This document shows, one piece after another, positions 5,236 to 25,318 of a DNA stretch of 64,000 bases (the stretch's first letter is position 1; each line of letters begins with the position of its first letter). A program made the translations under genes and the position numbers. Location: positions 185,798 to 249,797 of the IMG/VR virus record IMGVR_UViG_3300033143_001962. The stretch is one strand, 5' to 3'. The notes under the pieces were generated by a model. That model saw nothing but the letters and a program-made list of their open reading frames with translations, did not search any database and was not told the origin of the DNA.

Positions 5236-5500
5236 CAATTTTACCTTGTAGTCGTAATAGAACAAAACTTTTTTCACTCACCCAACGTGTCTCAGTGATG
5301 TGTACCATGCCCATGTTGCCATCTGCTTTGATACGGCCGGACACACCTTTTAAATGCGTTCCAGTCCACAACCACTGTTTAGTAACTGCGTCTATGCGCG
5401 GCAATAATATTCTTTCCTCTTGCCAATTTGCGCCCTTAAAGAATTCGTCACTTACGTTAGGATAAACTTGGCTAAGTAGTGTGTCTCTTACGTACCCCAT
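5228..5500 (-). CDS. family A paralog 1 (TAG stop)
   Basis: W...LPRIDAVT...HLKG...WVSEKSFVLLRLQG. Confidence 0.75.
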   Translation of the reverse strand: MGYVRDTLLSQVYPNVSDEFFKGANWQEERILLPRIDAVTKQWLWTGTHLKGVSGRIKADGNMGMVHITETRWVSEKSFVLLRLQGKIDD

Positions 5501-6360
5501 TCATTCTTCCATAAGTCAACTTGTAAACGTGCGCTATATCTAAAACCGTACAACATTGCTAACTTAGCCACCTCAGGAGCATTAACATCATACAATTCAG
5601 GATCACCACCACATGGCATTAAGTACACCTCACCGTGGAACCCCGCGTCTCTGTACTTTTCAACAAAGAAATTAACATCACGCATATCTGTTTGCTTGCT
5701 TACAACGAACTTTAAGTACACACTACCATACCTTTGATAGCTTGCTACAATTTCAGGTTGTAGTGCATCCTCCATTGCTTCACCAGAACTGCTAATCTTA
5801 GGACTAACACTAAATGTAAGCTGGTGAGATTCAGAATTTTTAATCTGATCTCTTAGTAAGTAATCTGCAAAGTCGTCTGTAATCTTTTGTGTGCCGTTTG
5901 TTTCAAATGTAACTTGTTTGTAGCCCATGTCACGTGCTGTACTTAGTAACTCAGGATAAGCTCGTTGCCACCCTAGTAGTGGCTCACCACCAGTTATAAC
6001 TAAGTGTGTGCTACCGTTGTTTTCTGCTACCGGGTTATTTTCTAAACGGACAACTTCCATTTGTCTAATAATCTCGTCAACTTCTAACATTGGACTTAAA
6101 TTCTTAAAACCTTTATGCCAACTTGCATAACTGTCACATCCGTACTTAGCAAGCGGCAGGCTATTATAACCCCAACCTGGATTATTTTTGTATTCTTTTG
6201 CAAACTGTTCCGGCTCTGTCGTTTCTTCGCCATCTTCTAATCCAAATGATCTACACTCAAAGTTGCAACCGAATGTTCTCACGAATACCGACGGAACGCC
6301 TGTGTATAATCCTTCGCCTTGTAAGCTGTGGAATATTTCTGCTATTTTAATTTTTGCCAT
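5488..6360 (-). CDS. queE: 7-carboxy-7-deazaguanine synthase (radical SAM)
   Basis: EIFHSLQGEG...FVRTFGCNFEC...CDS, VITGGEPLL, FETNGT, SVSPK, LQVDLW. Confidence 0.9.
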   Translation of the reverse strand: MAKIKIAEIFHSLQGEGLYTGVPSVFVRTFGCNFECRSFGLEDGEETTEPEQFAKEYKNNPGWGYNSLPLAKYGCDSYASWHKGFKNLSPMLEVDEIIRQMEVVRLENNPVAENNGSTHLVITGGEPLLGWQRAYPELLSTARDMGYKQVTFETNGTQKITDDFADYLLRDQIKNSESHQLTFSVSPKISSSGEAMEDALQPEIVASYQRYGSVYLKFVVSKQTDMRDVNFFVEKYRDAGFHGEVYLMPCGGDPELYDVNAPEVAKLAMLYGFRYSARLQVDLWKNEWGT

Positions 6361-6571
6361 ACTTTCCTTCTACGTAGTCAAGTAAAGCTAGTTGATCTTT
6401 AGTCTTACGAGAATCGCCGTAAGCCTTCACTAGCTTTATAATTTCATTTAATTCATATCGTTTTGTAATATTGTTTATTACCGCTTGCGCATGTAACGTC
6501 GAGTCATACTGATCAACATTATTGTTAATCCAATCTATTTCTGCTTGTAAACAAACGCCCATTACATCCAC
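6347..6571 (-). CDS. hypothetical protein
   Basis: ORF track, coupled to neighbours. Confidence 0.55.
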   Translation of the reverse strand: MDVMGVCLQAEIDWINNNVDQYDSTLHAQAVINNITKRYELNEIIKLVKAYGDSRKTKDQLALLDYVEGKYGKN

Positions 6572-6762
6572 CTCAATTTATAAAGCATTGCATCTTTCTC
6601 TCTGACAAAGCCTAACCGTTTCCAATCTAAGTACATGAAGTTCTTTTCGCCTACAGACTTCATAAGCCAGCGTAATTTATCGTCCTCAACCCTCGGGTGA
6701 TAGTTAGCAGGCATTGTGTACTTAAACTTCCGAGATTGGTTGCGTCGTTGTTTAGCGTTCAT
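6562..6762 (-). CDS. hypothetical, family C (C-terminal DAxxFxLKW-type motif)
   Basis: ends FVREKDAMLYKLRWM. Confidence 0.6.
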   Translation of the reverse strand: MNAKQRRNQSRKFKYTMPANYHPRVEDDKLRWLMKSVGEKNFMYLDWKRLGFVREKDAMLYKLRWM

Positions 6763-6908
6763 TATAACACCTTAGGTTCGTCATACCAAATACATTCTTC
6801 GTCGTGTCCGTCGACAAAGATGTGATCGATTGCTATTGCACCGCAACATCCGCAGTGCCCGACATTGTCTGCTAACTTAGCCCACATTTGTATTTGTTCT
6901 TGGTCCAT
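6762..6908 (-). CDS. small Cys/His-rich protein (48 aa)
   Basis: Manual: MDQEQIQMWAKLADNVGHCGCCGAIAIDHIFVDGHDEECIWYDEPKVL; TAATG overlaps on both sides. Confidence 0.55.
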   Translation of the reverse strand: MDQEQIQMWAKLADNVGHCGCCGAIAIDHIFVDGHDEECIWYDEPKVL

Positions 6909-7411
6909 TACTTTGGTTTACTCATCCACCAATCTTCAAATGGGAATACAACCCAAACATCGTTTTCTGCTTTGTTAATTTCTAATCCGGTGTATCCAAC
7001 TTCATTGAAGTCACTACTTTGATTATCCACTACTGTTGCAAAGCGTACATTGTTACCGAATACATTTTGGAATTCATCGTGAATGCTTATTTGCCAATCT
7101 TCTTTAATCCAATTAAGCGTTGCACCTGAGTCGTTGATGTCATCTACAATAAGAATGTTCTTACCATTGAACGCATCTTCTGCCATCCAGCAATTACTTT
7201 CCGGGCCTTCTTTGTTTGCATTGTCACGTAAACTTACATCTAAACTGTACATAGGTACATTCATGTATTGGCTGATTAGTACTGCTGGGAGCAATCCACC
7301 GCGTGTAATGCCCACAATGTAATCTGGTTTGTAGCCGTCTAAGTTAATGTCCCGAATAATGGTTTGCACCATACGTTCCATGTCTGTGTAGTCTAAATAT
7401 AGTTTGTTCAT
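6908..7411 (-). CDS. purine phosphoribosyltransferase (Gpt/Hpt-like)
   Basis: IVGITRGGLLPA, PRPP-binding ILIVDDINDSGAT, WVVFPFE. Confidence 0.88.
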   Translation of the reverse strand: MNKLYLDYTDMERMVQTIIRDINLDGYKPDYIVGITRGGLLPAVLISQYMNVPMYSLDVSLRDNANKEGPESNCWMAEDAFNGKNILIVDDINDSGATLNWIKEDWQISIHDEFQNVFGNNVRFATVVDNQSSDFNEVGYTGLEINKAENDVWVVFPFEDWWMSKPK

Positions 7412-7429
7412 AAGGTCTCCTATGTGTAC

Positions 7430-9458: not shown

Positions 9459-10046
9459 TTAGTATTCTACCTTGCAGTGACTCTTAGGTGTTTCCCAGAA
9501 CTCAACAGCTACAACATCAACACCAAGTCCTAGCATTTTCTTCTGAGCTAATGTAAGTAACCAAGCCGCTAAGTTTTCACTTGTTGGAATAAAGTCTACA
9601 AACACCATACCTTCGTACTTTTCGATTACTGGTACTATGTTAGGCACGTACTCTAGATTTGGCGTATAATACCCTTCAGCATGTTCTATGCACTTATCAA
9701 AGTCTAAGATCTTTTTAGGCGCTGAATGTGTACCCGATGTATGATCAAACCCAATCAGTTCAGGCACTTCGTGTGGTAATAGTGGATCGTTAATATCCAT
9801 TATGAACTTATGATCAAGTACATCATCAATGAAGTCTTTCATCCAACCTAAGTGTTTAAAATCTGTAACCATACCACGTGTTAGTTCATCACCTTCAAGC
9901 ATAACTTTAAGCTTACCTTGATGCCCATGCAAATGTCTACATGCTAAACATGTATCACCTTCCGCTGTAAATTCTGCATTTAATTCTTGCGACCAAACCC
10001 TGTGCCCGTAGCACCAGTCAAAACTTTTATCTATCGTCCACTTCAT
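9459..10046 (-). CDS. queD: 6-carboxy-5,6,7,8-tetrahydropterin synthase
   Basis: FDWCYGHRV...CRHLHGH...DFKHL...LDHKF...PTSENLA...FWETPKS. Confidence 0.92.
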   Translation of the reverse strand: MKWTIDKSFDWCYGHRVWSQELNAEFTAEGDTCLACRHLHGHQGKLKVMLEGDELTRGMVTDFKHLGWMKDFIDDVLDHKFIMDINDPLLPHEVPELIGFDHTSGTHSAPKKILDFDKCIEHAEGYYTPNLEYVPNIVPVIEKYEGMVFVDFIPTSENLAAWLLTLAQKKMLGLGVDVVAVEFWETPKSHCKVEY

Positions 10047-10436: not shown

Positions 10437-10841
10437 TTACTTGTACTTCAACGCAATCATAATGGCATCGTCGTCGTTATTGGTACCAATGTACACACGA
10501 TCACCACCACAGATTTCATTGAATTCAAATATGCTAGTTTCGTCGTATAACCCGCGTCCTGATTTAATTGTTGTGTGGTCTCCTAGCTCCCTTGCTGGGT
10601 AACAGTACGTATCCCTAAATGTTTTGTCGACATACCATCCCATCATCGGGCAATCGCCAAACACTTTATGCCAGTCTACCTCAATAATGTGCTTGTAGTT
10701 ATAGAAGACTGTTTTTATATTAGGCGCATGTAGCCACAAGTTTTCAGCATTCCACTTATCTATCTCACGCTCGTGATAAGTTCGTCCTGTCTTCCAGGTT
10801 AGGTACTTGTCTTTAAGATTTTCAAGAATTTTACTTGTCAC
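10437..10841 (-). CDS. hypothetical, family C-like C-terminus
   Basis: ends NDDDAIMIALKYK. Confidence 0.55.
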   Translation of the reverse strand: MTSKILENLKDKYLTWKTGRTYHEREIDKWNAENLWLHAPNIKTVFYNYKHIIEVDWHKVFGDCPMMGWYVDKTFRDTYCYPARELGDHTTIKSGRGLYDETSIFEFNEICGGDRVYIGTNNDDDAIMIALKYK

Positions 10842-13423: not shown

Positions 13424-13497
13424 TGGTGCTCGGTGCGGGATTCGAACCCGCGTCTTAAGATTTAGAATCCCGCGCTAAGCCACTCAGCTAACCGAAC
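13424..13497 (-). tRNA. tRNA with CUA anticodon (amber suppressor type), CCA encoded
   Basis: GTTCGGT/ACCGAGC acceptor stem, GCTG/TAGC D-stem, loop TT-CTA-AA, T-arm GCGGG-TTCGAAT-CCCGC, 3' ACCA; anticodon stem weak (C-A mismatch, two G-U). Confidence 0.85.
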
Positions 13498-14863: not shown

Positions 14864-15078
14864 TTTTTCACTACCTCTTCGGCGGTCTTAGCTGAGACTT
14901 CATGTTGACAATCATCGCAAGCTAACGCACAATTACTAATTGGCCCAGATAGGCCTTCTCTCATTAAACTTATATTATTACTGTTACAACGCCTACAGCT
15001 TCTAACTGAAAGAAACCGCATATAGCCTTCGTCAAATGTTTTAATGCCACCATTGACATTAATCCGTATTAGACTCAT
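14851..15078 (-). CDS. Lar (restriction alleviation)-like zinc ribbon
   Basis: CRRC...CDDC...SAKTAEEVVKKWN, Lar-family pattern. Confidence 0.55.
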   Translation of the reverse strand: MSLIRINVNGGIKTFDEGYMRFLSVRSCRRCNSNNISLMREGLSGPISNCALACDDCQHEVSAKTAEEVVKKWNG

Positions 15079-15364
15079 TGAGAAGTTTCTCTAGCATTTT
15101 GTATTGTTCGTAAGCATCTTTAAGTGCTGGATACTTCTCGTGCATTGCAAAGTTCGGTTCAAGTATAAGTAAACGTTCTTTAATTTGCTCTAACGTTTCT
15201 TTAATATCAACACCGTCAAGTGTTAAGTTGTCAGCTACCATGTCGCCATACGAAGATGCAAATGAAATTCCATCGTTGATTACATACATGCCATCGGCGT
15301 CAGTAATTAAGTCTGCACAGGCCGACAACACGTTTGGGTCTGTGCTGTGCGATTCACTTGCCAT
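15059..15364 (-). CDS. hypothetical, family B motif
   Basis: KYPALKDAYEQYKMLEKLL. Confidence 0.65.
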   Translation of the reverse strand: MASESHSTDPNVLSACADLITDADGMYVINDGISFASSYGDMVADNLTLDGVDIKETLEQIKERLLILEPNFAMHEKYPALKDAYEQYKMLEKLLNESNTD

Positions 15365-15650
15365 GCTTCATTGCTTCGAGTGTTATGAACTGAGTCAAAG
15401 CTTTATCAAAGTCTTCGTTCTCGGCAACTAAGTACAAGTTCTCTTTAGTTTGATGAACATGGTCATCGTACCAACTAAACCTAATAATCTTACCACCTGT
15501 TGCGTGAAGTATTTGGATGTTAAGTGGACGTTGCGAAAACACTCCACTATCATCACCTTCACGTACTGGCGCGTCGACTGAGCAATTACTGTACTTTGAT
15601 TGCTGGCCTTCTTCTGCCCACTGTGCTATTTTACGTTTGAACCATTTCAT
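15354..15650 (-). CDS. hypothetical protein
   Basis: ORF track, coupled. Confidence 0.6.
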   Translation of the reverse strand: MKWFKRKIAQWAEEGQQSKYSNCSVDAPVREGDDSGVFSQRPLNIQILHATGGKIIRFSWYDDHVHQTKENLYLVAENEDFDKALTQFITLEAMKHGK

Positions 15651-15658: not shown

Positions 15659-16339
15659 TTAACACTTGTTGTTATGGAATATAGACATAAACTCTTGTCT
15701 AGTACTAGGATCAGATTTAAATACGCCACCAAGCTTGCTTGTAATTGTGCTACTACCTACATCTTCAACACCGCGTGACTTAACACAAAAATGTTGTGCA
15801 TCCATAATAACTGCAACATCTTCTGTGTCTAATATAAATTGTAATGCGTTAAACACTTGCTCTGTTAAGCGTTCTTGTATTTGTGGACGTTTTGCAAAGT
15901 ACTCTACAATACGATTAATTTTACTCAACCCTAGTACAGTTTTCTTTGGAATGTAACCCACTGTAGCGAAGCCATCAATGACAACAAAGTGATGTTCGCA
16001 ATTTGATTGTACGTTTATGTTACGTTCAACAACCATTGCATCGTACTTCATCTTGTTTTCGACTGTTGTACACTTTGGAAATGCGGCTGGATCTAAGCCC
16101 CAAAACACTTCACCTACGTACATTTTCGCTACACGTTTAGGAGTATCAATGAGACTATCATCAGTCATGTCTAATCCTAACGTTTCCATAATATCCTTGA
16201 ACTTTGTTTCAATTATGTCAATTTTTGCTGATCTACTAAGTCCATTGTCGACCATTGGAGTTTGTACACCTTTTTCTTTAAGGTAGTCGTTTACCTCTTT
16301 ACCTAAATCTGAATCTGTTTTTACCTTGTTAAAACTCAT
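15659..16339 (-). CDS. folE: GTP cyclohydrolase I
   Basis: DTPKRVAKMY, SNCEHH, GLSKINRIV, RPQIQERLT, HFCVKSRGV. Confidence 0.95.
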   Translation of the reverse strand: MSFNKVKTDSDLGKEVNDYLKEKGVQTPMVDNGLSRSAKIDIIETKFKDIMETLGLDMTDDSLIDTPKRVAKMYVGEVFWGLDPAAFPKCTTVENKMKYDAMVVERNINVQSNCEHHFVVIDGFATVGYIPKKTVLGLSKINRIVEYFAKRPQIQERLTEQVFNALQFILDTEDVAVIMDAQHFCVKSRGVEDVGSSTITSKLGGVFKSDPSTRQEFMSIFHNNKC

Positions 16340-17012
16340 TTGTCTTCCTTTTCATGTGTTGTGTATAATTACCTATATCCCACTCTCTAGTGCAACATAA
16401 GCAACAAGCATTTCTGCCATTGAATCTTTTTCCATTGTGATTTATTATAGCAGCCTTTGCCATGCGTTGTCTAGTCTTTTGACTCTTAGGTTTATCTTTA
16501 TGCGTTGCTGCAATCAGGTCTTTTGTCTTATTAGTGTGCTTATGCCCTTCTGCGAACTTGTTACCTGTTACCGCTATAGATTGCGCAAGTCGTCCTGCAT
16601 CTGTTTCTTTAGTTTTGCCAAGTTGTCTTTCACGTTGATCTTGTGCAAGTTTTGCTTTTCGCTCAGGTGATCGTGTTGCTATAGTTTTTCTGCGCTTACT
16701 ATTAACGACTTCACCAAGGTCCCCACCACATCCGCCGTTAGCTACATTGTATCCATTCTGTGTGACATGTGACTCGTATAACTCTATAACAGGTTGTTCA
16801 AGGATTGAGATGTACTCTTTAGTTGGCCCTATACATAATGTTTCAATGATGAAATTTTCTACTCCGTACTTAGCAAACGCATATTGTACAGGATATTTAG
16901 GATTTTTAGCAGTACTTAAATGAATAGCCAGACGTTCTTCTACCTCTAGCTTAGTGAATCCGATATACGTTTTTCTGTTTATCAGATTTGTGATTTTGTA
17001 TAATTTATACAT
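16329..17012 (-). CDS. free-standing GIY-YIG homing endonuclease with NUMOD3-like repeats
   Basis: LYKITNLINRKTYIG, GYN...GG, HKHTNKTKDLI / KSQKTRQRMAKA. Confidence 0.88.
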   Translation of the reverse strand: MYKLYKITNLINRKTYIGFTKLEVEERLAIHLSTAKNPKYPVQYAFAKYGVENFIIETLCIGPTKEYISILEQPVIELYESHVTQNGYNVANGGCGGDLGEVVNSKRRKTIATRSPERKAKLAQDQRERQLGKTKETDAGRLAQSIAVTGNKFAEGHKHTNKTKDLIAATHKDKPKSQKTRQRMAKAAIINHNGKRFNGRNACCLCCTREWDIGNYTQHMKRKTNEF

Positions 17013-17089: not shown

Positions 17090-17716
17090 CTATTTATCCT
17101 TATTTATCGTTATTTCTCGCAGGTCTGGATATTCTTTGTACCCAGGACTACTTATTGTATTGATCTCATTGTTAGCTAATTTGTTCAAGCCGATTACTGC
17201 ATCTTCTGGACGCATCATATAGTGATAACCAATATCAAATTCTTTTTGATCTTTCCAGTGCTTAATGTCTGGATCACGCCCATCGTAAGATGCACGTTTA
17301 AGCCATTTGTATACTTCTCTGTTGTCTGTTAGTATTGCGCCACCATGTCCAATCTCAAGTGGCTTACCATGACCAAATGATAAGCATTGTACAGTCCTAG
17401 GTACGAACATATCTTTTTCAAATGTTCTAGCAAAATCCCAAATACCTGTACCACCTATGTTGTAGCCCTTATCCCACTTTTCTTCAGTGAACATATAACT
17501 AACGTCTAACTTTTCAAGTGTCATTAATACACTCAAGTAAGTGTTAGCAGGAATAGATGCGTACATTGGCGGACGCTTTCTACGTATGCCTAACTCAATT
17601 GCATGTGTGCAAGAGTCTGTTAACACGACACCAGGAGCACCTGTGTACTCGCTTATTGCTTTTTCAAATTCTTCAATTGCGTCAAATGGGTCTGTGTAGT
17701 CACTAATGTTTTTCAT
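17090..17716 (-). CDS. DegT/DnrJ/EryC1/StrS-like PLP aminotransferase (short form)
   Basis: EFEKAISEYTG, DSCTHAI, CLSFGHGKPLEIGHGGAILTD, GYHYMM. Confidence 0.75.
   Translation of the reverse strand: MKNISDYTDPFDAIEEFEKAISEYTGAPGVVLTDSCTHAIELGIRRKRPPMYASIPANTYLSVLMTLEKLDVSYMFTEEKWDKGYNIGGTGIWDFARTFEKDMFVPRTVQCLSFGHGKPLEIGHGGAILTDNREVYKWLKRASYDGRDPDIKHWKDQKEFDIGYHYMMRPEDAVIGLNKLANNEINTISSPGYKEYPDLREITINKDK
17091..17096 (-). promoter_or_regulatory. T4-like late promoter core (TAAATA)
   Basis: ATAAATA about 80 nt upstream of the endonuclease-folE unit. Confidence 0.5.
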
Positions 17717-18483
17717 AAGTATGCCTTTAGTTTTTCTGCGACAATCCGATTTGATTGTGGGCCAAGATGCCCAGCTGAATCGGATTGGTCCACAGACATT
17801 GTTTTAAAATCTGATTGTGTAAAATCCATATAAAAATCTTTATCAACTTGTGATATTAGCATCATAATATGATCGAGCCGTTGCTGTAACACATCATCTG
17901 GATATGCTGCTCCGTCAAACACTGCTTCCATTGCATCATTTAGTAAATGGTTACTCAACGGTACGTCCATTTGCACTATCTTATTAAGATAATTCGAAAA
18001 ACCGCTAACAAAAACGTACGGTATGTCTTTTTGTTTTAGCATACCCTGTAATGCTATAACATAGCTCAACCAATTGCAAATTTCAATGTACGTGTTCATA
18101 AAATGCTTCAAGTAGATTTTCCTAAAAGCACGAAAATCTTTATTCAATAACTTTGTACCTGTTGGTACAATACAGATCATATCTTCTCTGTCCGAATTCA
18201 ATGACCGGTGCATTGATAATCTACTCACCCCCGACCATTGAACTATAACACGATCATAGTCATTGATCGATAATGCTTGTACAGTCCTGCAGAAAATTTC
18301 GTGGTTAGACGAGCCGTCCCTTGCTCTATTATCTATTTTAACATTAAGATCCTGTTCTAATAGATTACTGTACAGGTACTTATTAATATCTTCGTCGGTT
18401 AGATACCCTGATGACTTCGAATGTGAGCATCCTACTAGTAAAATGTTTTCAATGTTTGTTGTAGTAGTCATTAAATGATTCAA
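17713..18483 (-). CDS. SGNH-hydrolase-like protein
   Basis: VGCSHS, GSSNHEI, IVQWS, HLGPQSN. Confidence 0.6.
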   Translation of the reverse strand: MNHLMTTTTNIENILLVGCSHSKSSGYLTDEDINKYLYSNLLEQDLNVKIDNRARDGSSNHEIFCRTVQALSINDYDRVIVQWSGVSRLSMHRSLNSDREDMICIVPTGTKLLNKDFRAFRKIYLKHFMNTYIEICNWLSYVIALQGMLKQKDIPYVFVSGFSNYLNKIVQMDVPLSNHLLNDAMEAVFDGAAYPDDVLQQRLDHIMMLISQVDKDFYMDFTQSDFKTMSVDQSDSAGHLGPQSNRIVAEKLKAYL

Positions 18484-19447
18484 TTATAGTTTTCATATCG
18501 CTAAATTGCGGTTGTGTGCTATTATAGTATAAACTAGCGTCTGCCACAAGTGAATCTGGGTCACCTTCACGTCTGGATTTTACCAAAACGTCTACTTTTC
18601 CGACAATATCTTCAAAAATATCAATTATTTGCTGATTACTGTACCCATCGTTCGTACCCAAATTGAATACTGCTGAGGATTGCCCTTCACTTAGGTCAAC
18701 ACATGCTTTTAAGTGTGCTAATGCGAGATCGCAGACATGAATATAATCACGAACGCAAGTGCCGTCAGGCGTATCGTAATCTGAGCCAAACAATTTAAAC
18801 ACGGTGTCGTTTTGATACGCTTCGAAAATGCGCGGTATAATGTGCGTATCATTTGGCTCTGGTCCTAGTTCGTTGTCCCATACATCTGCTCCTGCTGCGT
18901 TAAAATATCTAAAGCAATAACTTCTAAGGTCGTATGCTTTGTCATAATCTTCTAAGATAAGTTCAATCATCATCTTAGTACTACCATAAGGGTTACAAGG
19001 TACCGTTGGATCGGTCTCTTGTATCATAGCCGCGCAATTATCTGCATTGCCGTACACCGCGGCTGAGCTACTGAAAACAACGAATGGTGTATGCTTCAGC
19101 TTTCGCAGCTGATCTAGCATTTGAATTGTTTTAACCACATTGTTATTGTAGTACTCAGACGGGTCTAGTACACTTGGCCCAACTAAACTTGTTCCAGCAC
19201 AATGGACGACACCATCTAATGTACCGTATTTTTTAATATTTTCTTCATCAACGCAAAGCGCATCCCATAAGTCAGGATCGCCGTAATCGTTAGTAATGTA
19301 TTCAACACCTTTAACGATGTTTTGCTCAACGTGTCTGTTGTCGACTGAGATAACGTATGCACCTGCCTTGTGTAGTACTTTACAAGTGTGACTACCTACG
19401 TAGCCCATACCACCTGTTACTACTATTTTTAATCCGTCTAGTCTCAT
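18449..19447 (-). CDS. galE: UDP-glucose 4-epimerase
   Basis: VTGGMGYVGSH, FSSSAAVYG, YGSTK, RYFNAAGAD, DGTCVRDYIHV; start moved to MRLDG. Confidence 0.92.
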   Translation of the reverse strand: MRLDGLKIVVTGGMGYVGSHTCKVLHKAGAYVISVDNRHVEQNIVKGVEYITNDYGDPDLWDALCVDEENIKKYGTLDGVVHCAGTSLVGPSVLDPSEYYNNNVVKTIQMLDQLRKLKHTPFVVFSSSAAVYGNADNCAAMIQETDPTVPCNPYGSTKMMIELILEDYDKAYDLRSYCFRYFNAAGADVWDNELGPEPNDTHIIPRIFEAYQNDTVFKLFGSDYDTPDGTCVRDYIHVCDLALAHLKACVDLSEGQSSAVFNLGTNDGYSNQQIIDIFEDIVGKVDVLVKSRREGDPDSLVADASLYYNSTQPQFSDMKTIIESFNDYYNKH

Positions 19448-19719
19448 TTTGATAATTCCAATAATGTTATTAAGTGATTGTATGTTTCGTGTACTGCGGG
19501 GTTTTTGCTTTCGCACATCATATCAGTAAAACGTATTAAGTGACACATAGAATAAAAACGCTCATCGTCTATTTCAACTTTCATCTCAGTAATTACTTTA
19601 ACTGGATTTTCCATAGTGTCATGTGTCATTTCACGGATAGGCAACGGAACGTGCGTGTGCTTAACGTCCATTACTCTGAGTCCAAGTTTAGCTAATAGTT
19701 TCTGATTGATATTGGGCAT
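19444..19719 (-). CDS. hypothetical, family B motif
   Basis: KNPAVHETYNHLITLLELS. Confidence 0.6.
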   Translation of the reverse strand: MPNINQKLLAKLGLRVMDVKHTHVPLPIREMTHDTMENPVKVITEMKVEIDDERFYSMCHLIRFTDMMCESKNPAVHETYNHLITLLELSK

Positions 19720-20215: not shown

Positions 20216-20571
20216 TAAGGATCGTCCATGACAGGAACTTCATTTGCATTGCGACCATTCACTAATGCCATTGTAGTTAGTAGTCCTTCGAACGCATCTT
20301 TAATTGCCGGGTCATGTGAATTACGTATAGTATCCATTAGCTCTAAGTCTTTAATAAATTTTCCTAAGTTAATGTCCACGCCGTATATACTACCAGCAAA
20401 TGTTATCTCAGTATTCGTTGTTGCTGTATTATCGTACTTTTCAGTAACGCTTGCTACCATTAAATTATAATAAGATAGGTTTACTTTAAATGTGTCTTCA
20501 TTATTCATACTTTCCTGCTTGCACCATGTCTCTATAGCGCATATCATCTCGGTTCCATTCCTCACCACCAC
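20215..20571 (-). CDS. hypothetical, family B motif
   Basis: HDPAIKDAFEGLLTTMALV. Confidence 0.55.
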   Translation of the reverse strand: MVVRNGTEMICAIETWCKQESMNNEDTFKVNLSYYNLMVASVTEKYDNTATTNTEITFAGSIYGVDINLGKFIKDLELMDTIRNSHDPAIKDAFEGLLTTMALVNGRNANEVPVMDDP

Positions 20572-21679
20572 CTTGCATTATGTCAATGCACCGATCAATA
20601 GTACCGTTTGTCCAATCGCTTATCTTGCCTATGTTAGGACTTGGTGCATCTAATAATTTCATAAGTTTAGCTTCCGCATCATCTAAACTCCAAGGTACGT
20701 ATAAGCGATCTGCATCATTAGCAAATGTTTCCGGGAATGAACGGTATGCTGGATATAATACATTACATCCTAATGCGTCTGCTTCACTTACTGTATTACT
20801 AACCCAATCTTGTAATGCACAATTGAACATTATTCGACTATCGTTAACAATATCGTAGTACTGGTTCTTCTTTAAGTCTTCGTGTATAGTAAGTTTACCT
20901 TCTGCTTCTAACTTGCGAGCACGGTTAATAAACTTCTGATTGTTACTACGTAGTGGACCACCTTGCATAATTGCAAACTCCACTGTTGGATCTTTAGCTG
21001 TTACACGTTCAATTAAGTCCATGTAGAAGTCTGGTTGCTTCTCTTGATCCCAACGTGCGCCAAATACTACTCTGCGCTTACGTTCGTTAAAAGGTTTAAT
21101 GTTGTTATCAACTCTACCTTGTACTTCTTCTTTGCCAAATGCTAGTCCACTAATGTTATACAGTGGAGCAGTCCAGTTAGCTATCTTCATGTGTGCAACC
21201 ATTTCTTCATTAGTTGCAAGTACATGACAATTTGGAATTTCGTTAACCATTGCTTCGTACAATGACATCCACTTAGCCATACCCCATACATGAACAAAGT
21301 CATCTGGGTCTACTGCTTGTGCTAAACATCTTACGTATACTTGCGGTTGATCTTCTTTTGGTATCTGATTCATAATGTAAGGTAACGACTCGATACCAGG
21401 GCTAAACATATCTTCAAAAAAGATACAGTCTTCCCCGGTAACGTCACCGTTCCGCATCATTTGAACTAAGTTCATCATCTGCGACATTGAGAAATATGAT
21501 CTGCCATGGGCATCAAGCACTTGTCCCACTTGAATAGACTTAGTGTTGTCGATTTCCGTTCCGGGCACTATCACGTAATCTATGCCACGTTTCTTAAATG
21601 CCGCTTCGCTCCAGTCCTGTAACTGTAAGGTATATCTACCTTCATACGATTCCAAACCCATGTAAATCAATTTTCTCAT
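20501..21679 (-). CDS. GT-B (GT4-like) glycosyltransferase
   Basis: VVFGARWDQEKQPDF...ALQDWVSNTVSEADALGCNVLYP (ExxxxG acceptor motif variant). Confidence 0.75.
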   Translation of the reverse strand: MRKLIYMGLESYEGRYTLQLQDWSEAAFKKRGIDYVIVPGTEIDNTKSIQVGQVLDAHGRSYFSMSQMMNLVQMMRNGDVTGEDCIFFEDMFSPGIESLPYIMNQIPKEDQPQVYVRCLAQAVDPDDFVHVWGMAKWMSLYEAMVNEIPNCHVLATNEEMVAHMKIANWTAPLYNISGLAFGKEEVQGRVDNNIKPFNERKRRVVFGARWDQEKQPDFYMDLIERVTAKDPTVEFAIMQGGPLRSNNQKFINRARKLEAEGKLTIHEDLKKNQYYDIVNDSRIMFNCALQDWVSNTVSEADALGCNVLYPAYRSFPETFANDADRLYVPWSLDDAEAKLMKLLDAPSPNIGKISDWTNGTIDRCIDIMQGGGEEWNRDDMRYRDMVQAGKYE

Positions 21680-21688
21680 TTTCTTTCC

Positions 21689-21922
21689 TTATCGTTTGCC
21701 GGTGTATACTGGCTTGCTATGGAATCGGCGTAAGTCGAAATCCCATTGGTTCTTGCAATTTTTATTATTGCGGAACTTGTTGTACTGCTGGAAGGGATAT
21801 GTACGCATATTGTACATGTCAGCTTCGTTAAATTTATATCCGTGACTCACGCAAAATGCTTTGTACTTTTCTAAGTCATCAAACACTTGTTCCGTGCGCG
21901 GGTTTTTCTTTTTATACTTCAT
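21689..21922 (-). CDS. small basic hypothetical protein
   Basis: ORF track; start moved to MKYKKK. Confidence 0.55.
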   Translation of the reverse strand: MKYKKKNPRTEQVFDDLEKYKAFCVSHGYKFNEADMYNMRTYPFQQYNKFRNNKNCKNQWDFDLRRFHSKPVYTGKR

Positions 21923-21941
21923 TGTTAATTCCTTTATGGGA

Positions 21942-22376
21942 TTATAGTTTAGTGTAATGGATCTCCGATCCATTTTCGTTATCTTCGCTTACGCTTATTG
22001 TGATATCTCTTTCAGGATATCTGTTCGCAATGTAATTATAAAGTTCGTCGGATAGCATCTCGCATGACTTATAATCTAGTTGCAGAATATCTTGGTTGAA
22101 GCCATTAAGGCACCAACGCTTAAATTGTATAAATTCTATTTCTCTATCATTGTGGAATACTTCGATTGCAATTTTAAAATGGAACATGTGCCTATGTGGG
22201 TGGGCAAGGAAACTTACATCGTACTCGTCACCTGTTGCAAGGGCAGGATTAATCTTTGCGTCTGGGTAGTTGTGAACGCCTTCGCGTTGGAATGTTACCC
22301 AAATAAACCGCTGTGCGTTAGTCTTTACTGTATCAACTTTATCTTGCTTTGCTTGTATTCTTTGTTCTGTATCCAT
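21942..22376 (-). CDS. QueD-paralog T-fold protein, DpdL-like (putative CDG decarboxylase)
   Basis: LAHPHRHMF fits LxxxHRHxF; DREIEFIQFK, SCEMLS, ISVSEDNENG; DpdL motif recalled from the literature, not searched. Confidence 0.65.
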   Translation of the reverse strand: MDTEQRIQAKQDKVDTVKTNAQRFIWVTFQREGVHNYPDAKINPALATGDEYDVSFLAHPHRHMFHFKIAIEVFHNDREIEFIQFKRWCLNGFNQDILQLDYKSCEMLSDELYNYIANRYPERDITISVSEDNENGSEIHYTKL

Positions 22377-22411: not shown

Positions 22412-22639
22412 TTAAACGGTTCCACGTGCTTGTTTTTCAACAATTTCAATTTCAACTCGTTCTCGAATTGAATCCAATGCGTCCATTAAGTCGTCTTCAT
22501 TGCGTGGCTCGTGCTCGTCATTGATAAAATTCAATGTAGCATTAAACCCGTTTTCTTCTAAGAATTCATGTAGTGCTTGTGAAATTGCTGACTTGCCTAC
22601 ACCGGCTGCGCCAGTAACGGTTATTGTAATTTTACTCAT
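22412..22639 (-). CDS. small P-loop-containing protein
   Basis: TGAAGVGKS Walker A in 75 aa. Confidence 0.5.
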   Translation of the reverse strand: MSKITITVTGAAGVGKSAISQALHEFLEENGFNATLNFINDEHEPRNEDDLMDALDSIRERVEIEIVEKQARGTV

Positions 22640-23271
22640 ACTATTTTATCATCCTTGTATTTTTTCCAATTTGTGTACTTGTCTGGATCCATTAAGCTAT
22701 GTAACTTATGACACCATACACCTGGGTTCGATGCATCAAAATCTTTATCATCGATCTTAACTGTAGCGTTATATCCCATTTGGTTAGCATAAGGAATCTT
22801 ACAACTAATCATCGGAATGAAGTTATGCTTTTCGACTAAAATAGTTTCAACAATATCTTCTGCGTACTTAACGTCAAAGTCTAACGTACACCAAAAGTCA
22901 TCTACGTGCATAAGACAACCATTGATCATCTCAACCCATTCTCGCAACTGGTCCGACAGACTTGGCAACGGAGTGTTAATAAGATCAAAACTTTGATTGG
23001 CACCGAAGTAAATAGCCTGACATTGTAATGTGTTAGCTCTTGTAAGTATTTCTCTAAGGGGCTGCACACCTACAACAAATAATGTTTTAAGTTCATGTGC
23101 TGGTGTATGCTCTACTTCATAACCTATGAAGAAGTTAGCATCTGTATTTTCTGTTTCGTTTGTATAATCTCTTTTCATTTTCTTTCCTTGTGAACATTTA
23201 GGGCATGTTGCGCCATGTGGGTATTGTACCTTGTGCGTTGGACACAAATGATATGTATCTGCATTTAACAT
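22636..23271 (-). CDS. uncharacterised protein in the dpdA-dpdL interval
   Basis: FFIGYEVEHTP...IYFGANQSF...TVKIDDKDF...NPGVWCH; optional N-terminal C..H...C..C finger. Confidence 0.65.
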   Translation of the reverse strand: MLNADTYHLCPTHKVQYPHGATCPKCSQGKKMKRDYTNETENTDANFFIGYEVEHTPAHELKTLFVVGVQPLREILTRANTLQCQAIYFGANQSFDLINTPLPSLSDQLREWVEMINGCLMHVDDFWCTLDFDVKYAEDIVETILVEKHNFIPMISCKIPYANQMGYNATVKIDDKDFDASNPGVWCHKLHSLMDPDKYTNWKKYKDDKIV

Positions 23272-23513
23272 TTCTTATCCCAGTTTATATCTTCTTTGTT
23301 TGTCTTGTCTGTTAATATGTACGCAATGTAATGTCGCTCACCTTCCGGACCATCATCCCTTGCAACTTTATGTAATGTTAACGGTCTGCCTGGATCTCGC
23401 TTTAATAAATGCCAAATCTTTTCGGCATCGGGCAAGTCATCTACAATCATATCTCGTATAATGTGGTGTGGTATTTCAGCCATAGCTTCCGTGATTAACT
23501 GTTCTAGTTTCAC
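23265..23513 (-). CDS. hypothetical protein
   Basis: ORF track; N-terminus MKLEQLITEA. Confidence 0.5.
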   Translation of the reverse strand: MKLEQLITEAMAEIPHHIIRDMIVDDLPDAEKIWHLLKRDPGRPLTLHKVARDDGPEGERHYIAYILTDKTNKEDINWDKKC

Positions 23514-23754
23514 CTTCTGTACCGCATAGTTCGCAATACGGCGTATAGTCTGTATAATCTGTATCTAAGTATCCGCCTGGGCTGTAGTACTCCCTGGTCT
23601 TAACGTACTGCTGAGGATGGTGACATATACTTTTTAATTCTTCTTTCGCGTCCATGATTTCTTGAGACATTGCATCACGTTCAGCTTCTAATTCTGCAAT
23701 GTTTTTGTTCCAAGCTTTAATATCACGTATGTACATATTACTCTCCAAATTCAA
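23476..23754 (-). CDS. coiled-coil plus zinc-finger hypothetical protein
   Basis: CHHP...YCELCG. Confidence 0.55.
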   Translation of the reverse strand: MNLESNMYIRDIKAWNKNIAELEAERDAMSQEIMDAKEELKSICHHPQQYVKTREYYSPGGYLDTDYTDYTPYCELCGTEGETRTVNHGSYG

Positions 23755-25318
23755 ATAACGATGTTTCTGCTACTGAAGCCTTAACTAACTTTTCTTCTTC
23801 TTTTGCTGTTGCCTTAGCAACATCAAGATCAAACATATCGTCGAACTGTCCAGCTGCACTAATAGCTTTCTTACCGCCCATGCCACGTGCGCCACTGATC
23901 CCCATAAAGAACTTACTGTACACATCTAAAATTGCCATACGTTCTTCGTATGCATCTGTTGAGAACACTGCGTCAATAATATCAGTAATAGTTGTGCCTG
24001 TGTGAAGGTCTACTAACATTTTCGGCATAATACCTGCATCGTACTTGCGGTTAGCTTCTTGTACTGAATTAATATGGTGCCAAACATTGTGCCCCATCAT
24101 TAATGCATAACTGAAACTATCCCAAGATGTTTTACCTTCCTTCTTAATCTTATTAAGGTCGCCCGGTGCGTAAACATCAATGTCACTAATAAGTAGTTGT
24201 TCAGATATAGGACTGTCTTCAAATACATCATGAAACACCTTGCCAGTCTTTGGGTTAATGTCAGTTGTTGCAACTTCTGAGAACTTACGATTGTCTGTTG
24301 CGTACTTCTTATCGTCCATTGTAGGATTCATTCTATAACTCCACTTACCACTTTTGTTTGCTTTAGTAAGTGTTCTGTAATCAGGAGTAACAGTCTCATG
24401 ATATATTTGTCCATTGGCGGTAGCAAGAAACGGGCTGGCGCAATCAAAGGATATTGTAAAATTCTTATTATGTGTGCGTCTTACTGCCCGTTGTAATGCT
24501 GTTAATAACACCGCCCATTCTAGTTTTGATGTGCCTAAGAAATGCATCCAGTCTTGCTTGCCTTCCTCTAATAGACCATCATGAATAAGTGTAACTACTC
24601 GTTTAATAGCTAGGTGGGGATCAGCCATGTTAGCTCCTCCCATTGCCCAACCTTTAAAATACTTTTCGTGCTTAGTCGGATCGCTGTACTCTTTCATTTC
24701 TTCGTACCAACGATCAGCGTCGGCATGGTTACTTCCTTGTAGTACATTAAGGAACTTTGCATCGCCTGTAGCATGTTCCATAAAGTATTCGTGATTGTAC
24801 TTAGTCGCATCTACTGCGTCTTGGTAACTTTTAATATTTGTTTTCTTAACGGACTCTGGATTAGTACAAGTCCATGTAGGTATATCAAGTGTCATACTGT
24901 AATCACTAATGCTGCATAGCCATTTAAGTACTGTGCTTCTGTATTTTTCAGCTTTAGGACATTTAGGGTCAAGCCAGTCTGCTTCCCACACACCTTTTGC
25001 AATTTGGAATCCACCACTATCAGCTAACAGTAATGTATCACTGCTACGCTTACGGATCATATCTTCTTTAGGTACTTCCTTAGTTAAATCTAAGTTAGCG
25101 TGTCCTGCTGAGTACAATCCCCATTTGTACTTAAACAAACCTTCCTTGTTATTAAAGAAGTTCATCATTTCCATATCAGGAATGCCTGTAGGCATACGCT
25201 CTTGCGGAACGTTCTCTGGATCACTTTGCTGCTTACCAATGTAAGTGCTGTAGAAGCTACTAATAGCTGGTAAGAATAATGCGTAATCTTCTTGCTTATC
25301 TGTTAAATTTTTATTCAT
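23738..25318 (-). CDS. dpdA: DpdA/TGT-fold 7-deazaguanine transglycosylase
   Basis: ADSGGFQ, MTLDIP, FLNVLQG, GWAMGG, MHFLG, SFDCASP, GHN; no CxCxxC zinc site of tRNA TGTs. Confidence 0.8.
   Translation of the reverse strand: MNKNLTDKQEDYALFLPAISSFYSTYIGKQQSDPENVPQERMPTGIPDMEMMNFFNNKEGLFKYKWGLYSAGHANLDLTKEVPKEDMIRKRSSDTLLLADSGGFQIAKGVWEADWLDPKCPKAEKYRSTVLKWLCSISDYSMTLDIPTWTCTNPESVKKTNIKSYQDAVDATKYNHEYFMEHATGDAKFLNVLQGSNHADADRWYEEMKEYSDPTKHEKYFKGWAMGGANMADPHLAIKRVVTLIHDGLLEEGKQDWMHFLGTSKLEWAVLLTALQRAVRRTHNKNFTISFDCASPFLATANGQIYHETVTPDYRTLTKANKSGKWSYRMNPTMDDKKYATDNRKFSEVATTDINPKTGKVFHDVFEDSPISEQLLISDIDVYAPGDLNKIKKEGKTSWDSFSYALMMGHNVWHHINSVQEANRKYDAGIMPKMLVDLHTGTTITDIIDAVFSTDAYEERMAILDVYSKFFMGISGARGMGGKKAISAAGQFDDMFDLDVAKATAKEEEKLVKASVAETSLFEFGE

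What the first reader, a model, noticed from the sequence alone, without database searches (positions are those of the whole stretch)
5488..25318. QueC-less 7-deazaguanine DNA modification pathway (FolE, QueD, QueE, DpdL-like, DpdA)
Seen: folE (15659), queD (9459), queE (5488), a TGT-fold protein without the tRNA-TGT zinc site (23738), and a second T-fold protein with LxxxHRHxF (21942); no queC or queF in 64 kb. Known: FolE, QueD and QueE make CDG; QueC is needed for preQ0; DpdA exchanges 7-deazaguanines into DNA. As I recall it, the LxxxHRHxF paralog (DpdL) was proposed to decarboxylate CDG to 7-deazaguanine. Inference: this jumbo phage replaces some G with dDG or dCDG as an anti-restriction measure, with the genes unusually scattered over about 20 kb.
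Basis: partly seen in the sequence, partly recalled or inferred. Interest (0 to 1): 0.65.

Follow-up and report, generated by a model that had tools for sequence, protein, structure and literature searches.

The report
Jumbo-phage 7-deazaguanine DNA modification module
An uncultivated jumbo phage carries a QueC-independent gene set for replacing guanine in its DNA with a 7-deazaguanine, a known kind of anti-restriction system, but here with a divergent base-swapping enzyme and conserved sugar-transferase and phosphoribosyltransferase genes that published models do not explain.

Summary
No QueC or QueF lies in the 250-kb record that holds the window. That record is about 72% complete. It is collinear with a complete 344-kb relative. 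That relative has a QueC-like gene in a stretch the record covers, but the matching slot here lacks it. More distant, 91-99% complete relatives have DpdL and no QueC.

This is the DpdL-type pathway of Cui/Hutinet 2023 (phiST, dDG). The nearest cultured kin are PA5oct-like Pseudomonas jumbo phages, whose DNA resists G-site restriction enzymes.

- The "scatter" is one conserved module, 8.7 kb in a relative, stretched to 20 kb by small ORFs and a homing endonuclease.
- The transglycosylase belongs to a long jumbo-phage clade, with DpdA2 as its only detectable relative.
- A GT4 glycosyltransferase, a purine-type phosphoribosyltransferase and an unknown protein (X211) are conserved parts. The GT occurs only in DpdL phages, across seven lineages.

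So plain dDG or dCDG may not be the end product. The kind is known; this variant has unexplained parts.

The parts
23738..25318 (-). DpdA-like DNA guanine transglycosylase (526 aa, P0002), of the long jumbo-phage clade
   Evidence: TGT TIM-barrel fold: Foldseek E 3e-7; VIA Z 19.5, rmsd 4.5, 304 aa. DSGGFQ at 100-105, D145 and D292 are invariant in 31 homologues. No Cys3His zinc site. Profile link to DpdA2: hhalign probability 94%, E 1.4e-7. 36% identical to PA5oct EST35_0316.
22636..23271 (-). X211, a conserved protein of unknown function; the real start is probably near residue 33
   Evidence: Present in 28 of 29 full-flank related loci. Homologous to the ACP17 protein just upstream of its dpdA (HMM E 3.5e-23). 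No Pfam or PHROG hit. Fold search gave nothing above noise.
21942..22376 (-). DpdL (QueD paralogue, proposed CDG decarboxylase)
   Evidence: LAHPHRHMF motif. Aligns with phiST and ACP17 DpdL. phrog_17812 E 1e-27. Present in 29 of 29 related loci.
21689..21973 (-). x94, a small conserved ORF between DpdL and the GT
   Evidence: Present in 24 of 29 related loci, always in this position. No family hit.
20501..21679 (-). GT4-type (GT-B) glycosyltransferase
   Evidence: Pfam Glycos_transf_1, 28.7 bits against a cut-off of 26.4. Profile hit to PDB 6eji (WlaC), E 8.8e-6. Present in 26 of 29 related loci. Adjacent to dpdL or dpdA in ACP17, BUCT-ZZ01 (71% identity), BUDD/X1, BCSR5, PA5oct and Phosso.
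18449..19516 (-). UDP-glucose 4-epimerase (GalE)
   Evidence: TIGR01179 E 2e-86, 289.7 bits against a cut-off of 262.3. Present in 20 of 29 related loci.
17090..17716 (-). X208, a half-length DegT/DnrJ/EryC1-type aminotransferase-like protein
   Evidence: PF01041 E 6e-13, 49 bits against a cut-off of 19.8. Present in 19 of 29 related loci, about 200 aa in all of them.
16329..17012 (-). GIY-YIG homing endonuclease (an insertion, not part of the pathway)
   Evidence: TIGR01453 E 1e-18. Present in 0 of 29 related loci.
15659..16339 (-). GTP cyclohydrolase I (FolE)
   Evidence: NF006824 E 1.7e-95, above cut-off. Present in 26 of 29 related loci.
15059..15650 (-). x98 (15354-15650) and x101 (15059-15364), small ORFs that follow FolE in relatives
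   Evidence: Present in 15 of 29 and 6 of 29 related loci. They sit between FolE and QueD in the compact locus L016. x101 is weakly similar to PA5oct_0319.
9459..10046 (-). 6-carboxytetrahydropterin synthase (QueD), carrying an insertion of about 60 aa
   Evidence: PF01242 E 7e-25. CRHLHGH motif. phrog_2389 E 1.5e-33.
6908..7411 (-). Purine-type phosphoribosyltransferase (PRT)
   Evidence: PF00156 E 5e-16. Best NCBIfam match is xanthine PRT, E 1.6e-10, below cut-off. Lies next to QueE here, in PA5oct (0321), in BUCT-ZZ01 (annotated XGPRT; 32% identity, E 6.5e-18) and in L016.
5488..6360 (-). 7-carboxy-7-deazaguanine synthase (QueE), phage type
   Evidence: phrog_2076 E 3e-53. QueE NCBIfam models reach E 1e-14 but stay below cut-off. 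C32 and C36 are invariant. C75 in GCDS is shared with most phage QueE proteins in the alignment, including phiST and PA5oct.
27076..31578 (-). Context: family B DNA polymerase (28807-31578) and a sliding-clamp-like protein (27076-27795) directly upstream of dpdA
   Evidence: PF00136 E 6e-36. The 239-aa protein matches the Phosso protein annotated 'sliding clamp' and a PA5oct 'structural protein'. Both are present in 29 of 29 related loci. Phage 9g has the same PolB, clamp, DpdA1 order.

Best explanation
The region is one conserved module, next to the replication genes, that makes a 7-deazaguanine and puts it into the phage's own DNA without QueC.

Inferred from family membership: FolE turns GTP into dihydroneopterin triphosphate, QueD makes CPH4, and the radical-SAM enzyme QueE makes 7-carboxy-7-deazaguanine (CDG).

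Inferred, and never shown biochemically for any DpdL: the QueD paralogue DpdL processes CDG. The published proposal is decarboxylation to 7-deazaguanine.

Inferred from the fold, the conserved catalytic aspartates and distant kinship to the experimentally active VH7D DpdA2: the 526-aa zinc-less TGT-fold enzyme exchanges guanine in double-stranded DNA for that base after replication. This would protect the genome from restriction.

Shown here by comparative genomics: a GT4 glycosyltransferase, a purine-type phosphoribosyltransferase next to QueE, and the unknown X211 belong to the module. In this clade GalE- and DegT-like sugar-nucleotide genes belong to it too.

Their roles are inferred only. 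My best guess is that the PRT salvages the guanine that DpdA releases (or a deazapurine base), and that the GT adds a sugar to the modified DNA base or to a pathway intermediate. If so, the final base may be more elaborate than dDG.
For: Gene identities.

TGT fold and catalytic motifs. The motifs align with DpdA2 (DSGGFQ with DSGGLQ, LDIP with FDEIP, SFDCAS with SYDSTT), hhalign E 1.4e-7. VH7D DpdA2 inserts preQ1, preQ0 and CDG into DNA in E. coli (PMC10516641).

The same long TGT-like clade sits beside QueF, QueC, a YhhQ-like transporter and FolE in Vibrio phage 2.275.O. It sits beside GT, DpdL and QueE in PA5oct. [quoted passage not shown]

Module conservation in 29 full-flank loci: DpdA 29, DpdL 29, X211 28, GT 26, FolE 26, x94 24, GalE 20, X208 19. 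Locus L016 holds a compact 8.7-kb version with the same gene order, including QueD, PRT and QueE.

The GT lies next to DpdL in seven lineages, with shuffled gene order. It is absent from all QueC-type DpdA phages tested and from DpdL phages that lack a DpdA2-like or long DpdA.

QueC absence. The PolB, clamp, DpdA order matches phage 9g.
Against: There are no chemical data for this phage.

DpdL activity has never been demonstrated. Co-expressing dpdL and dpdA from phiST or ACP17 in E. coli gave no dDG (PMC10516641).

phiST makes dDG without any GT, so the GT is not needed for dDG itself.

Decarboxylated 7-deazaguanine offers no obvious acceptor for a sugar.

The sugar genes could instead serve the virion or the host surface.

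The record is only about 72% complete. The two closest relatives carry a QueC-like gene together with DpdL, so QueC and DpdL are not mutually exclusive in this clade.

The phage encodes His, Tyr, Asn and Asp GUN tRNAs, which are the usual substrates of TGT.
Confidence: 0.72

Rival explanations
1. DpdL decarboxylates CDG, DpdA inserts DG (or CDG), and the product is plain dDG or dCDG. The GT, PRT, X211 and sugar-nucleotide genes are unrelated neighbours, for example for glycosylating the virion or the host envelope, or for general nucleotide salvage.
For: phiST has DpdL and a DpdA3 but no GT, and it contains dDG at complete replacement (PMC10516641). VH7D DpdA2 can insert CDG at low efficiency. 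7-deazaguanine has no obvious acceptor group for a sugar. GalE and X208 are missing from about a third of related loci.
Against: The GT keeps its place beside DpdL or DpdA in seven lineages despite rearranged gene order, and it is found in no tested phage that lacks DpdL. The PRT keeps its place beside QueE in three lineages. X211 is in 28 of 29 loci and also in ACP17. Linkage this persistent is unusual for unrelated genes. Expressing ACP17 dpdA and dpdL alone did not yield dDG.
Confidence: 0.3
2. A nucleotide-level route. The PRT next to QueE condenses CDG (or 7-deazaguanine) with PRPP, as TubE and ToyH do in tubercidin and toyocamycin biosynthesis (recalled from memory, not tested). DpdL then acts on the nucleotide, and the deaza-dGTP is incorporated by the phage polymerase. 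The TGT-like protein would have a secondary role.
For: A purine-type PRT lies beside QueE in the window, PA5oct, BUCT-ZZ01 and L016. The module abuts PolB. The ADG nucleoside was detected in cells infected with CP220 (PMC10516641).
Against: A DpdA-type enzyme with intact catalytic aspartates is in 29 of 29 loci. The PRT is not universal: ACP17, BUDD and Phosso loci show none within the fetched flanks. The authors' DpdL model favours action on the free base. The PA5oct digests suggest motif-dependent rather than total modification.
Confidence: 0.1
3. The pathway is not really QueC-less. A queC lies in the roughly 28% of the genome that is missing, or the host supplies preQ0. The DNA would then carry dPreQ0, dADG or dG+.
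For: The record is about 72% complete. The two closest relatives (G001, G002) have a QueC-like gene: phrog_1550 E 2.5e-26, an SGGFDS motif and a CGECASC motif. The record has a PP-loop protein of unknown role (P0243).
Against: G000 covers the slot that matches the relatives' QueC-like gene, and that slot holds unrelated small ORFs. The part of G001 missing from G000 (about 142-253 kb) has no QueC hit. G003, G004 (99% complete) and G005 have DpdL and only NadE-like PP-loop hits. P0243 lacks QueC's cysteine motif and is not linked to que genes elsewhere.
Confidence: 0.1
4. The TGT-fold enzyme modifies tRNA, either the phage's own GUN tRNAs or the host's, rather than DNA.
For: The fold is that of tRNA-guanine transglycosylase. 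The genome encodes 32 tRNAs, including His-GTG, Tyr-GTA, Asn-GTT and Asp-GTC.
Against: The zinc site that canonical tRNA TGTs carry (recalled) is absent. The protein does not reach the Pfam or NCBIfam TGT cut-offs. Its only detectable sequence kin are phage DpdA2 enzymes, which act on DNA. The gene sits beside PolB and a clamp, as in phage 9g. PA5oct DNA is modified at G. No QueC, QueF, QueA or QueG genes are present to make the usual tRNA bases.
Confidence: 0.05

Closest known systems
DpdL-type 7-deazaguanine system of Cellulophaga phage phiST (dDG; Cui, Hutinet et al., NAR 2023, PMC10516641)
   Same: It has FolE, QueD, QueE, a DpdL with LxxxHRHxF, and a DNA transglycosylase, with no QueC. 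The QueE cysteine pattern is the same.
   Different: phiST uses a 259-aa DpdA3, which is not detectably related to the window's enzyme (hhalign E 0.039). It has no GT, no PRT and no X211. Its module is compact, and the phage is 79 kb.
Pseudomonas jumbo phage PA5oct (Wroclawvirus) and its relatives
   Same: The closest cultured homologues: TGT-like 36% identity, DpdL about 50%, and GT, PRT, QueE and the clamp-like protein are all homologous. The order is TGT-like, GT, DpdL ... PRT, QueE, downstream of the DNA polymerase. Its DNA resists G-site restriction enzymes (PMC12191111). A deazaguanine system was predicted for it (PMC7824862).
   Different: Protein identities are low. PA5oct DpdL has HFH in place of HRH. 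No X211, GalE or DegT-like homologue was found in the fetched PA5oct locus. The chemical nature of its modification is unpublished in the papers I could read.
Acidovorax phage ACP17, Synechococcus phage BUCT-ZZ01 and Xanthomonas phages BUDD/X1 (DpdL with a DpdA2-like enzyme)
   Same: DpdL and GT lie next to dpdA. ACP17 has an X211 homologue. BUCT-ZZ01 has a PRT beside QueE, and its GT is 71% identical to the window's.
   Different: Their transglycosylases belong to the DpdA2 group (BLAST E 1e-42 to 1e-50 to VH7D DpdA2). The window's enzyme reaches them only at E 1e-5 or worse. These phages are 156-200 kb and mostly T4-like.
DpdA2 of Vibrio phage VH7D (an experimentally validated DNA transglycosylase)
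   Same: The catalytic core aligns over residues 93-308, and the Asp and Gly motifs are conserved.
   Different: Similarity is only at the profile level. VH7D works with QueC, QueF and DpdM and inserts preQ1 and preQ0.
Bacterial tRNA-guanine transglycosylase (TGT; e.g. PDB 2ash, 1q2r)
   Same: The fold matches: Z 19.5 over 304 aa, 15-16% identity. The DSGGFQ-type active-site loop is present.
   Different: The window's protein has no Cys3His zinc site and carries large insertions and a C-terminal extension. It does not pass the TGT family thresholds.

Membership tests
GTP cyclohydrolase I (FolE) | Scores above the curated equivalog cut-off | tested here: met
   NF006824, 318.7 bits against 202. 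TIGR00063, 239.9 bits against 181.6.
QueD (6-carboxytetrahydropterin synthase) | PTPS T-fold domain with the CxxxHGH signature | tested here: met
   PF01242, 87.7 bits against 22.4. Motif CRHLHGH. TIGR03367 stays below cut-off (50.8 against 89.25) because of an internal insertion.
QueE (CDG synthase, radical SAM) | Passes the curated QueE or radical-SAM model thresholds | tested here: not met
   Best QueE NCBIfam score is 54.3 bits against a cut-off of 206. Pfam Radical_SAM scores 20.6 against 29.5. The protein does belong to the phage QueE-like PHROG 2076 (E 3e-53).
QueE (CDG synthase, radical SAM) | Three cluster-binding cysteines, shared with the QueE of a phage of proven phenotype | tested here: met
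   C32 and C36 are invariant. C75 in GCDS is shared with phiST, PA5oct, BUCT, BUDD and Moby QueE, with an insert of variable length between the cysteines.
DpdL (proposed CDG decarboxylase) | QueD paralogue in which CxxxHGH is replaced by LxxxHRHxF | tested here: met
   LAHPHRHMF. It aligns with phiST CGPG_00067 and ACP17 DpdL, and the QueD rows of the alignment keep C...HGH.
DpdL (proposed CDG decarboxylase) | Occurs with FolE, QueD, QueE and a DpdA, without QueC | tested here: met
   Note that relatives G001 and G002 combine DpdL with a QueC-like gene.
DpdL (proposed CDG decarboxylase) | Decarboxylates CDG | not testable with these tools
   This activity has never been shown for any family member (PMC10516641).
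DpdA (7-deazaguanine DNA transglycosylase), generic | TGT TIM-barrel fold with conserved catalytic aspartates | tested here: met
   Z 19.5 to TGT. D100 (in DSGGFQ), D145 and D292 are invariant in 31 homologues and align with the invariant Asp residues of DpdA2. That these correspond to TGT Asp102, Asp156 and Asp280 rests on my own knowledge of Z. mobilis TGT.
DpdA (7-deazaguanine DNA transglycosylase), generic | Acts on DNA rather than tRNA | not testable with these tools
   Only indirect support: gene context, the PA5oct restriction digests, and kinship to DpdA2.
DpdA1 (9g type) | Detectable sequence similarity to 9g gp03 | tested here: not met
   hhalign E 0.2. The test has little power: the DpdA2 profile against DpdA1 also gives only E 0.042.
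DpdA2 (VH7D/nt-1 type) | Clusters with VH7D, nt-1, ACP17 and Moby at the BLAST level | tested here: not met
   Within DpdA2, E is 1e-41 to 1e-74. The window protein against them gives E 1e-5 to 8. There is a profile-level link (probability 94%, E 1.4e-7). I read this as a sister or outlying clade, not a member.
DpdA3 (phiST/CP220 type) | A protein of about 260 aa, similar to CGPG_00065 | tested here: not met
   hhalign E 0.039, probability 1.3%. tblastn with CGPG_00065 finds no PA5oct-type phage.
DpdA4 (archaeal-virus type, DUF6610) | Matches Pfam DUF6610 (PF20314, per PMC10516641) | tested here: not met
   The Pfam scan of P0002 returned no family at E <= 0.01.
tRNA-guanine transglycosylase (Pfam PF01702 / TIGR00449) | Passes the family threshold and has the Cys3His zinc site | tested here: not met
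   TIGR00449 scores 16.9 bits against 47.6. There is no Pfam hit. No cysteine follows residue 293.
GT4 / Glycos_transf_1 glycosyltransferases | Passes the Pfam gathering threshold | tested here: met
   PF00534, 28.7 bits against 26.4. Profile hit to WlaC (6eji), E 8.8e-6. Atlas neighbours carry Glycos_transf_1 and GT4-conflict. Donor and acceptor are unknown.
QueC (preQ0 synthase) | Any ORF in the record that passes PF06508 or has the PP-loop plus the C-terminal Cys cluster | tested here: not met
   The best hit scores 12.8 bits and covers the PP-loop only, in P0243, which lacks the Cys cluster. The relatives' QueC-like gene has no counterpart here.

The most novel reading that the evidence does not exclude
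In the GT-bearing DpdL phages (this clade, PA5oct, ACP17, BUCT-ZZ01, BUDD/X1, BCSR5, Phosso) the final DNA base is not plain 7-deazaguanine. It would be a further decorated 7-deazaguanine, most likely carrying a sugar. The conserved GT4 enzyme would make it, perhaps with X211, and in this clade GalE-, DegT- and Ugd-like enzymes would supply the sugar nucleotide. As far as I know, that would be the first sugar-bearing purine hypermodification in phage DNA. It could also explain why dpdA plus dpdL from ACP17 gave no product in E. coli.
Probability: 0.25. Interest if true: 0.85.

Novelty: new variant of a known kind. Interest (0 to 1): 0.55.

Why it matters
7-deazaguanine DNA modifications are a major phage counter-defence, and the QueC-independent DpdL branch is the least understood. 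No DpdL activity has been shown, and reconstitution has failed.

This window, together with thousands of metagenomic homologues, shows that the branch is widespread in environmental jumbo phages. It uses a long transglycosylase clade that falls outside every DpdA subfamily I could test (DpdA1-4). It also travels with a glycosyltransferase, a purine phosphoribosyltransferase and an unknown protein.

These genes are concrete candidates for the 'other unknown enzymes' that the 2023 study invoked. Cultured phages that carry them (PA5oct, ACP17, BUCT-ZZ01) make the question directly testable by LC-MS and knockouts.

The presence or absence of a QueC-like gene among near relatives offers a natural experiment on how the product changes.

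Tried and rejected
- Megablast of 5 kb of the window against phage records found no match.
- A sequence profile of the TGT-like family against PDB sequences found nothing at E <= 1. Only the fold search linked it to TGT.
- X211: no Pfam, PHROG or NCBIfam hit. Foldseek against PDB gave nothing at E <= 0.001. The wide VIA search peaked at Z 6.3, which is within noise. QueE structures recur at Z 5.5-5.7 and Atlas QueE clusters at TM 0.46-0.48, but hhalign of X211 against QueE gives probability 0.2%. I treat 'QueE-like' as an unsupported lead.
- The PP-loop protein P0243 (outside the window) as a QueC substitute: rejected. It has no Cys cluster, it is absent from all five large relatives, and elsewhere it travels with a 205-aa partner but not with que genes.
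- The QueF hit in the window is FolE's T-fold.
- The N-terminal 260 aa of Bakedbeans gp176, annotated as fused to DpdL, has no homologues in my sets and was not informative.
- TAG recoding, prompted by the CTA suppressor tRNA: TAG ends 29 of 242 long ORFs, and read-through lengths are ordinary. No other genetic code was used.
- The supplementary tables of PMC10516641, which would give the published DpdA subfamily of the ACP17 and PA5oct enzymes, are not held.
- Not used: read laying, the look-up of sequencing runs, complex prediction and the big representative search. No claim here rests on them.

Full report
**Where the window lies.** The window is the last 64 kb of a 249,797-bp linear IMG/VR viral record, which CheckV estimates to be 72% complete. 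GC content is about 39%, and nearly all genes lie on the minus strand. The record is collinear with a 344,483-bp relative that has direct terminal repeats (G001, 100% complete). G000 1-92 kb corresponds to G001 253-344 kb, and G000 93-250 kb to G001 1-142 kb. The counterpart of G001 142-253 kb is therefore missing. 'Jumbo phage' is correct.

**Checking the observation.** All five genes exist at the stated coordinates.
- FolE (15659-16339) passes the curated equivalog cut-off.
- QueD (9459-10046) has a PTPS domain and the CxxxHGH signature, as CRHLHGH.
- QueE (5488-6360) belongs to the phage QueE-like PHROG (E 3e-53). It fails the curated bacterial QueE thresholds. It keeps three cysteines in the pattern shared with the QueE of phiST and other phages.
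- The second T-fold protein (21942-22376) carries LAHPHRHMF, an exact fit to LxxxHRHxF. It is homologous to the two DpdL proteins named in the literature: ACP17 at 49% and phiST CGPG_00067 at 31%.
- The 526-aa protein (23738-25318) scores almost nothing against TGT sequence models. Its AlphaFold2 model (pLDDT 88) nevertheless matches only tRNA-guanine transglycosylases (Foldseek E about 3e-7; VIA Z 19.5 over 304 residues). It has no cysteine where the TGT zinc site would lie.

**Is it really QueC-less?** Six-frame searches of the whole record with the QueC and QueF models find nothing above cut-off. Because the record is incomplete, I tested its relatives.

The two closest, G001 and G002 (DpdA 83% and 79% identical), do carry a QueC-like gene of 195 and 231 aa. 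It has a PP-loop SGGFDS and a C-terminal CGECASC, scores phrog_1550 at E 2.5e-26, and matches the QueC model end to end at E 1.5e-6. G000 covers that neighbourhood, and its flanking genes are conserved. The slot (G000 121.4-124.7 kb) holds unrelated small ORFs, and no homologue exists elsewhere in the 250 kb. The part of G001 that G000 lacks has no QueC hit.

More distant relatives G003, G004 (99% complete) and G005 have DpdL but only NadE-like PP-loop proteins. So the QueC-less state is the norm for the wider clade and is very likely true of this phage. The clade does, however, show that DpdL and a QueC-like gene can coexist.

**What the TGT-fold protein is.** It has more than 8,000 metagenomic homologues. 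In an alignment of 31 of them, DSGGFQ, D145 and D292 are invariant. In cultured phages the family occurs in PA5oct-like Pseudomonas jumbo phages (36% identity), Sinorhizobium phage Phosso and Vibrio phage 2.275.O.
- In 2.275.O it sits beside QueF, a YhhQ-like transporter, QueC and FolE.
- In PA5oct it sits beside a GT, DpdL and QueE.

This ties the family to 7-deazaguanine metabolism whichever base is made.

Profile comparison links it to the DpdA2 group (probability 94%, E 1.4e-7), and the active-site motifs align. That group includes VH7D DpdA2, which has been shown to insert bases into DNA. No link was detected to DpdA1, DpdA3 or DUF6610/DpdA4. At the BLAST level it is clearly outside DpdA2. 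I therefore call it a DpdA-like enzyme of a distinct long clade. I could not check how the published supplementary tables classify the PA5oct protein.

Its position, directly after a family B polymerase and a clamp-like protein, mirrors phage 9g, where the order is PolB, clamp, DpdA1, FolE.

**The scatter is one stretched module.** I examined 29 related IMG/VR loci with full 10-kb flanks. The genes found near the transglycosylase, as counts out of 29, are DpdL 29, X211 28, GT 26, FolE 26, x94 24, GalE 20, and the half-size DegT-like X208 19.

One relative (L016) packs the whole set into 8.7 kb, in this order: DpdA, X211, DpdL, x94, GT, X208, FolE, x98, x101, QueD, PRT, QueE. The window has the same order. 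Here it is stretched to 20 kb by many small clade-specific ORFs, a GIY-YIG homing endonuclease, a suppressor tRNA and a nucleotide-sugar dehydrogenase-like ORF.

The 392-aa protein at 20501-21679 is a GT4-type glycosyltransferase. Homologues lie next to DpdL and/or DpdA in ACP17, BUCT-ZZ01 (71% identical), BUDD/X1, BCSR5, PA5oct-like phages and Phosso. The gene order differs in each.

Whole-record searches with a GT profile gave these results:
- It is found in Phosso, which served as the positive control.
- It is absent from the QueC-type DpdA phages VH7D, Moby, 2.275.O and 9g.
- It is absent from DpdL phages in which I found no DpdA2-like or long DpdA in the records or flanks searched: phiST, RHph_I1_18, Ahp1, Bakedbeans and D479.

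Every GT-positive phage I examined is DpdL-positive.

A purine-type phosphoribosyltransferase (6908-7411) lies beside QueE here and in PA5oct, BUCT-ZZ01 and L016.

X211 has a homologue just upstream of ACP17 dpdA. Its fold could not be assigned.

The main text of the 2023 paper mentions neither glycosyl- nor phosphoribosyl-transferases. I found no later paper on DpdL.

**Mechanism.**
- Shown: the gene families, the fold, the motif conservation, the linkage and the phyletic pattern.
- Inferred: GTP is converted to CDG by FolE, QueD and QueE. DpdL processes CDG, by the proposed decarboxylation. The DpdA-like enzyme swaps the base into DNA after replication.
- Supporting evidence from kin: PA5oct DNA resists five G-containing restriction sites (PMC12191111), and phiST DNA is fully dDG (PMC10516641).
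- Open: what the GT, PRT and X211 do. The PRT could recycle released guanine into GMP. It could instead ribosylate the deazapurine, as in tubercidin or toyocamycin biosynthesis (my recollection, untested).

The GT argues that the end product in GT-bearing phages differs from that of phiST. Against this, decarboxylated 7-deazaguanine offers no obvious sugar acceptor, and phiST needs no GT.

**Verdict.** The kind of system is known: the DpdL branch of phage 7-deazaguanine DNA modification. The module here is a new variant with a divergent transglycosylase clade and conserved accessory enzymes that remain unexplained. Cultured relatives make these enzymes testable.

No alternative genetic code was used. 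No reads tools were used.

Noticed in passing
window 13424-13497 (-): A tRNA with a CTA anticodon (an amber suppressor; ARAGORN labels it tRNA-Pyl) sits inside the stretched module and is conserved in relative G001. TAG still ends 29 of 242 long ORFs with ordinary read-through lengths, so there is no sign of genome-wide recoding.
   Followed up: partly
window 16329-17012 (-): A free-standing GIY-YIG homing endonuclease (TIGR01453 E 1e-18) overlaps the start of folE by 11 bases. It is absent from all 29 related loci, so it is probably a recent insertion.
   Followed up: partly
window 10437-11637 (-): A nucleotide-sugar dehydrogenase-like ORF of 268 aa has only the N-terminal and central domains (PF00984 E 4e-21). 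The following 134-aa ORF has no family hit. This could be a truncated or split Ugd-like gene. Homologues lie near the module in 13 of 80 related loci.
   Followed up: partly
G001:C1:26871-27455 and G002:C1:164484-165062 (relatives; the matching slot in G000 is 121.4-124.7 kb, outside the window): A divergent QueC-like gene is present in the two closest relatives together with DpdL, and absent from this record at the same position. This is a natural presence/absence difference. It contradicts the idea that DpdL occurs only in QueC-less phages.
   Followed up: yes
G000:C1:134653-136457 (outside the window; L001:766-2498): A two-gene cassette made of a protein of about 205-223 aa and a 373-aa PP-loop ATPase (WSGGIDST, no QueC-type Cys cluster). 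It is absent from five large relatives but found in other phage contigs. Function unknown.
   Followed up: partly
G000:C1:136415-150028 (outside the window): An array of about 30 tRNA genes includes all four GUN tRNAs (His, Tyr, Asn, Asp), which are the usual TGT substrates.
   Followed up: no
L003:14766-15143 (PA5oct EST35_0318): PA5oct DpdL reads HFH where the published DpdL signature has HRH, so the arginine is not universal in the family.
   Followed up: no
L007:3879-5452 and L008:11267-13105 (BUDD, BCSR5): In these two DpdL phages a PAPS-reductase-like PP-loop protein and two further shared proteins sit between FolE or DpdL and the GT. They form another conserved but unexplained extension of DpdL modules.
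   Followed up: no
window 22636-23271 (-), N-terminal 32 residues: If translation starts at 23271, X211 gains a CPxH...CPKC stretch, which looks like a zinc ribbon and is not present in relatives. The shorter start near residue 33 fits the family better.
   Followed up: no
G000:C1:39102-52130 (outside the window): A single ORF of 4,342 aa, conserved in G001 at 61% identity.
   Followed up: no
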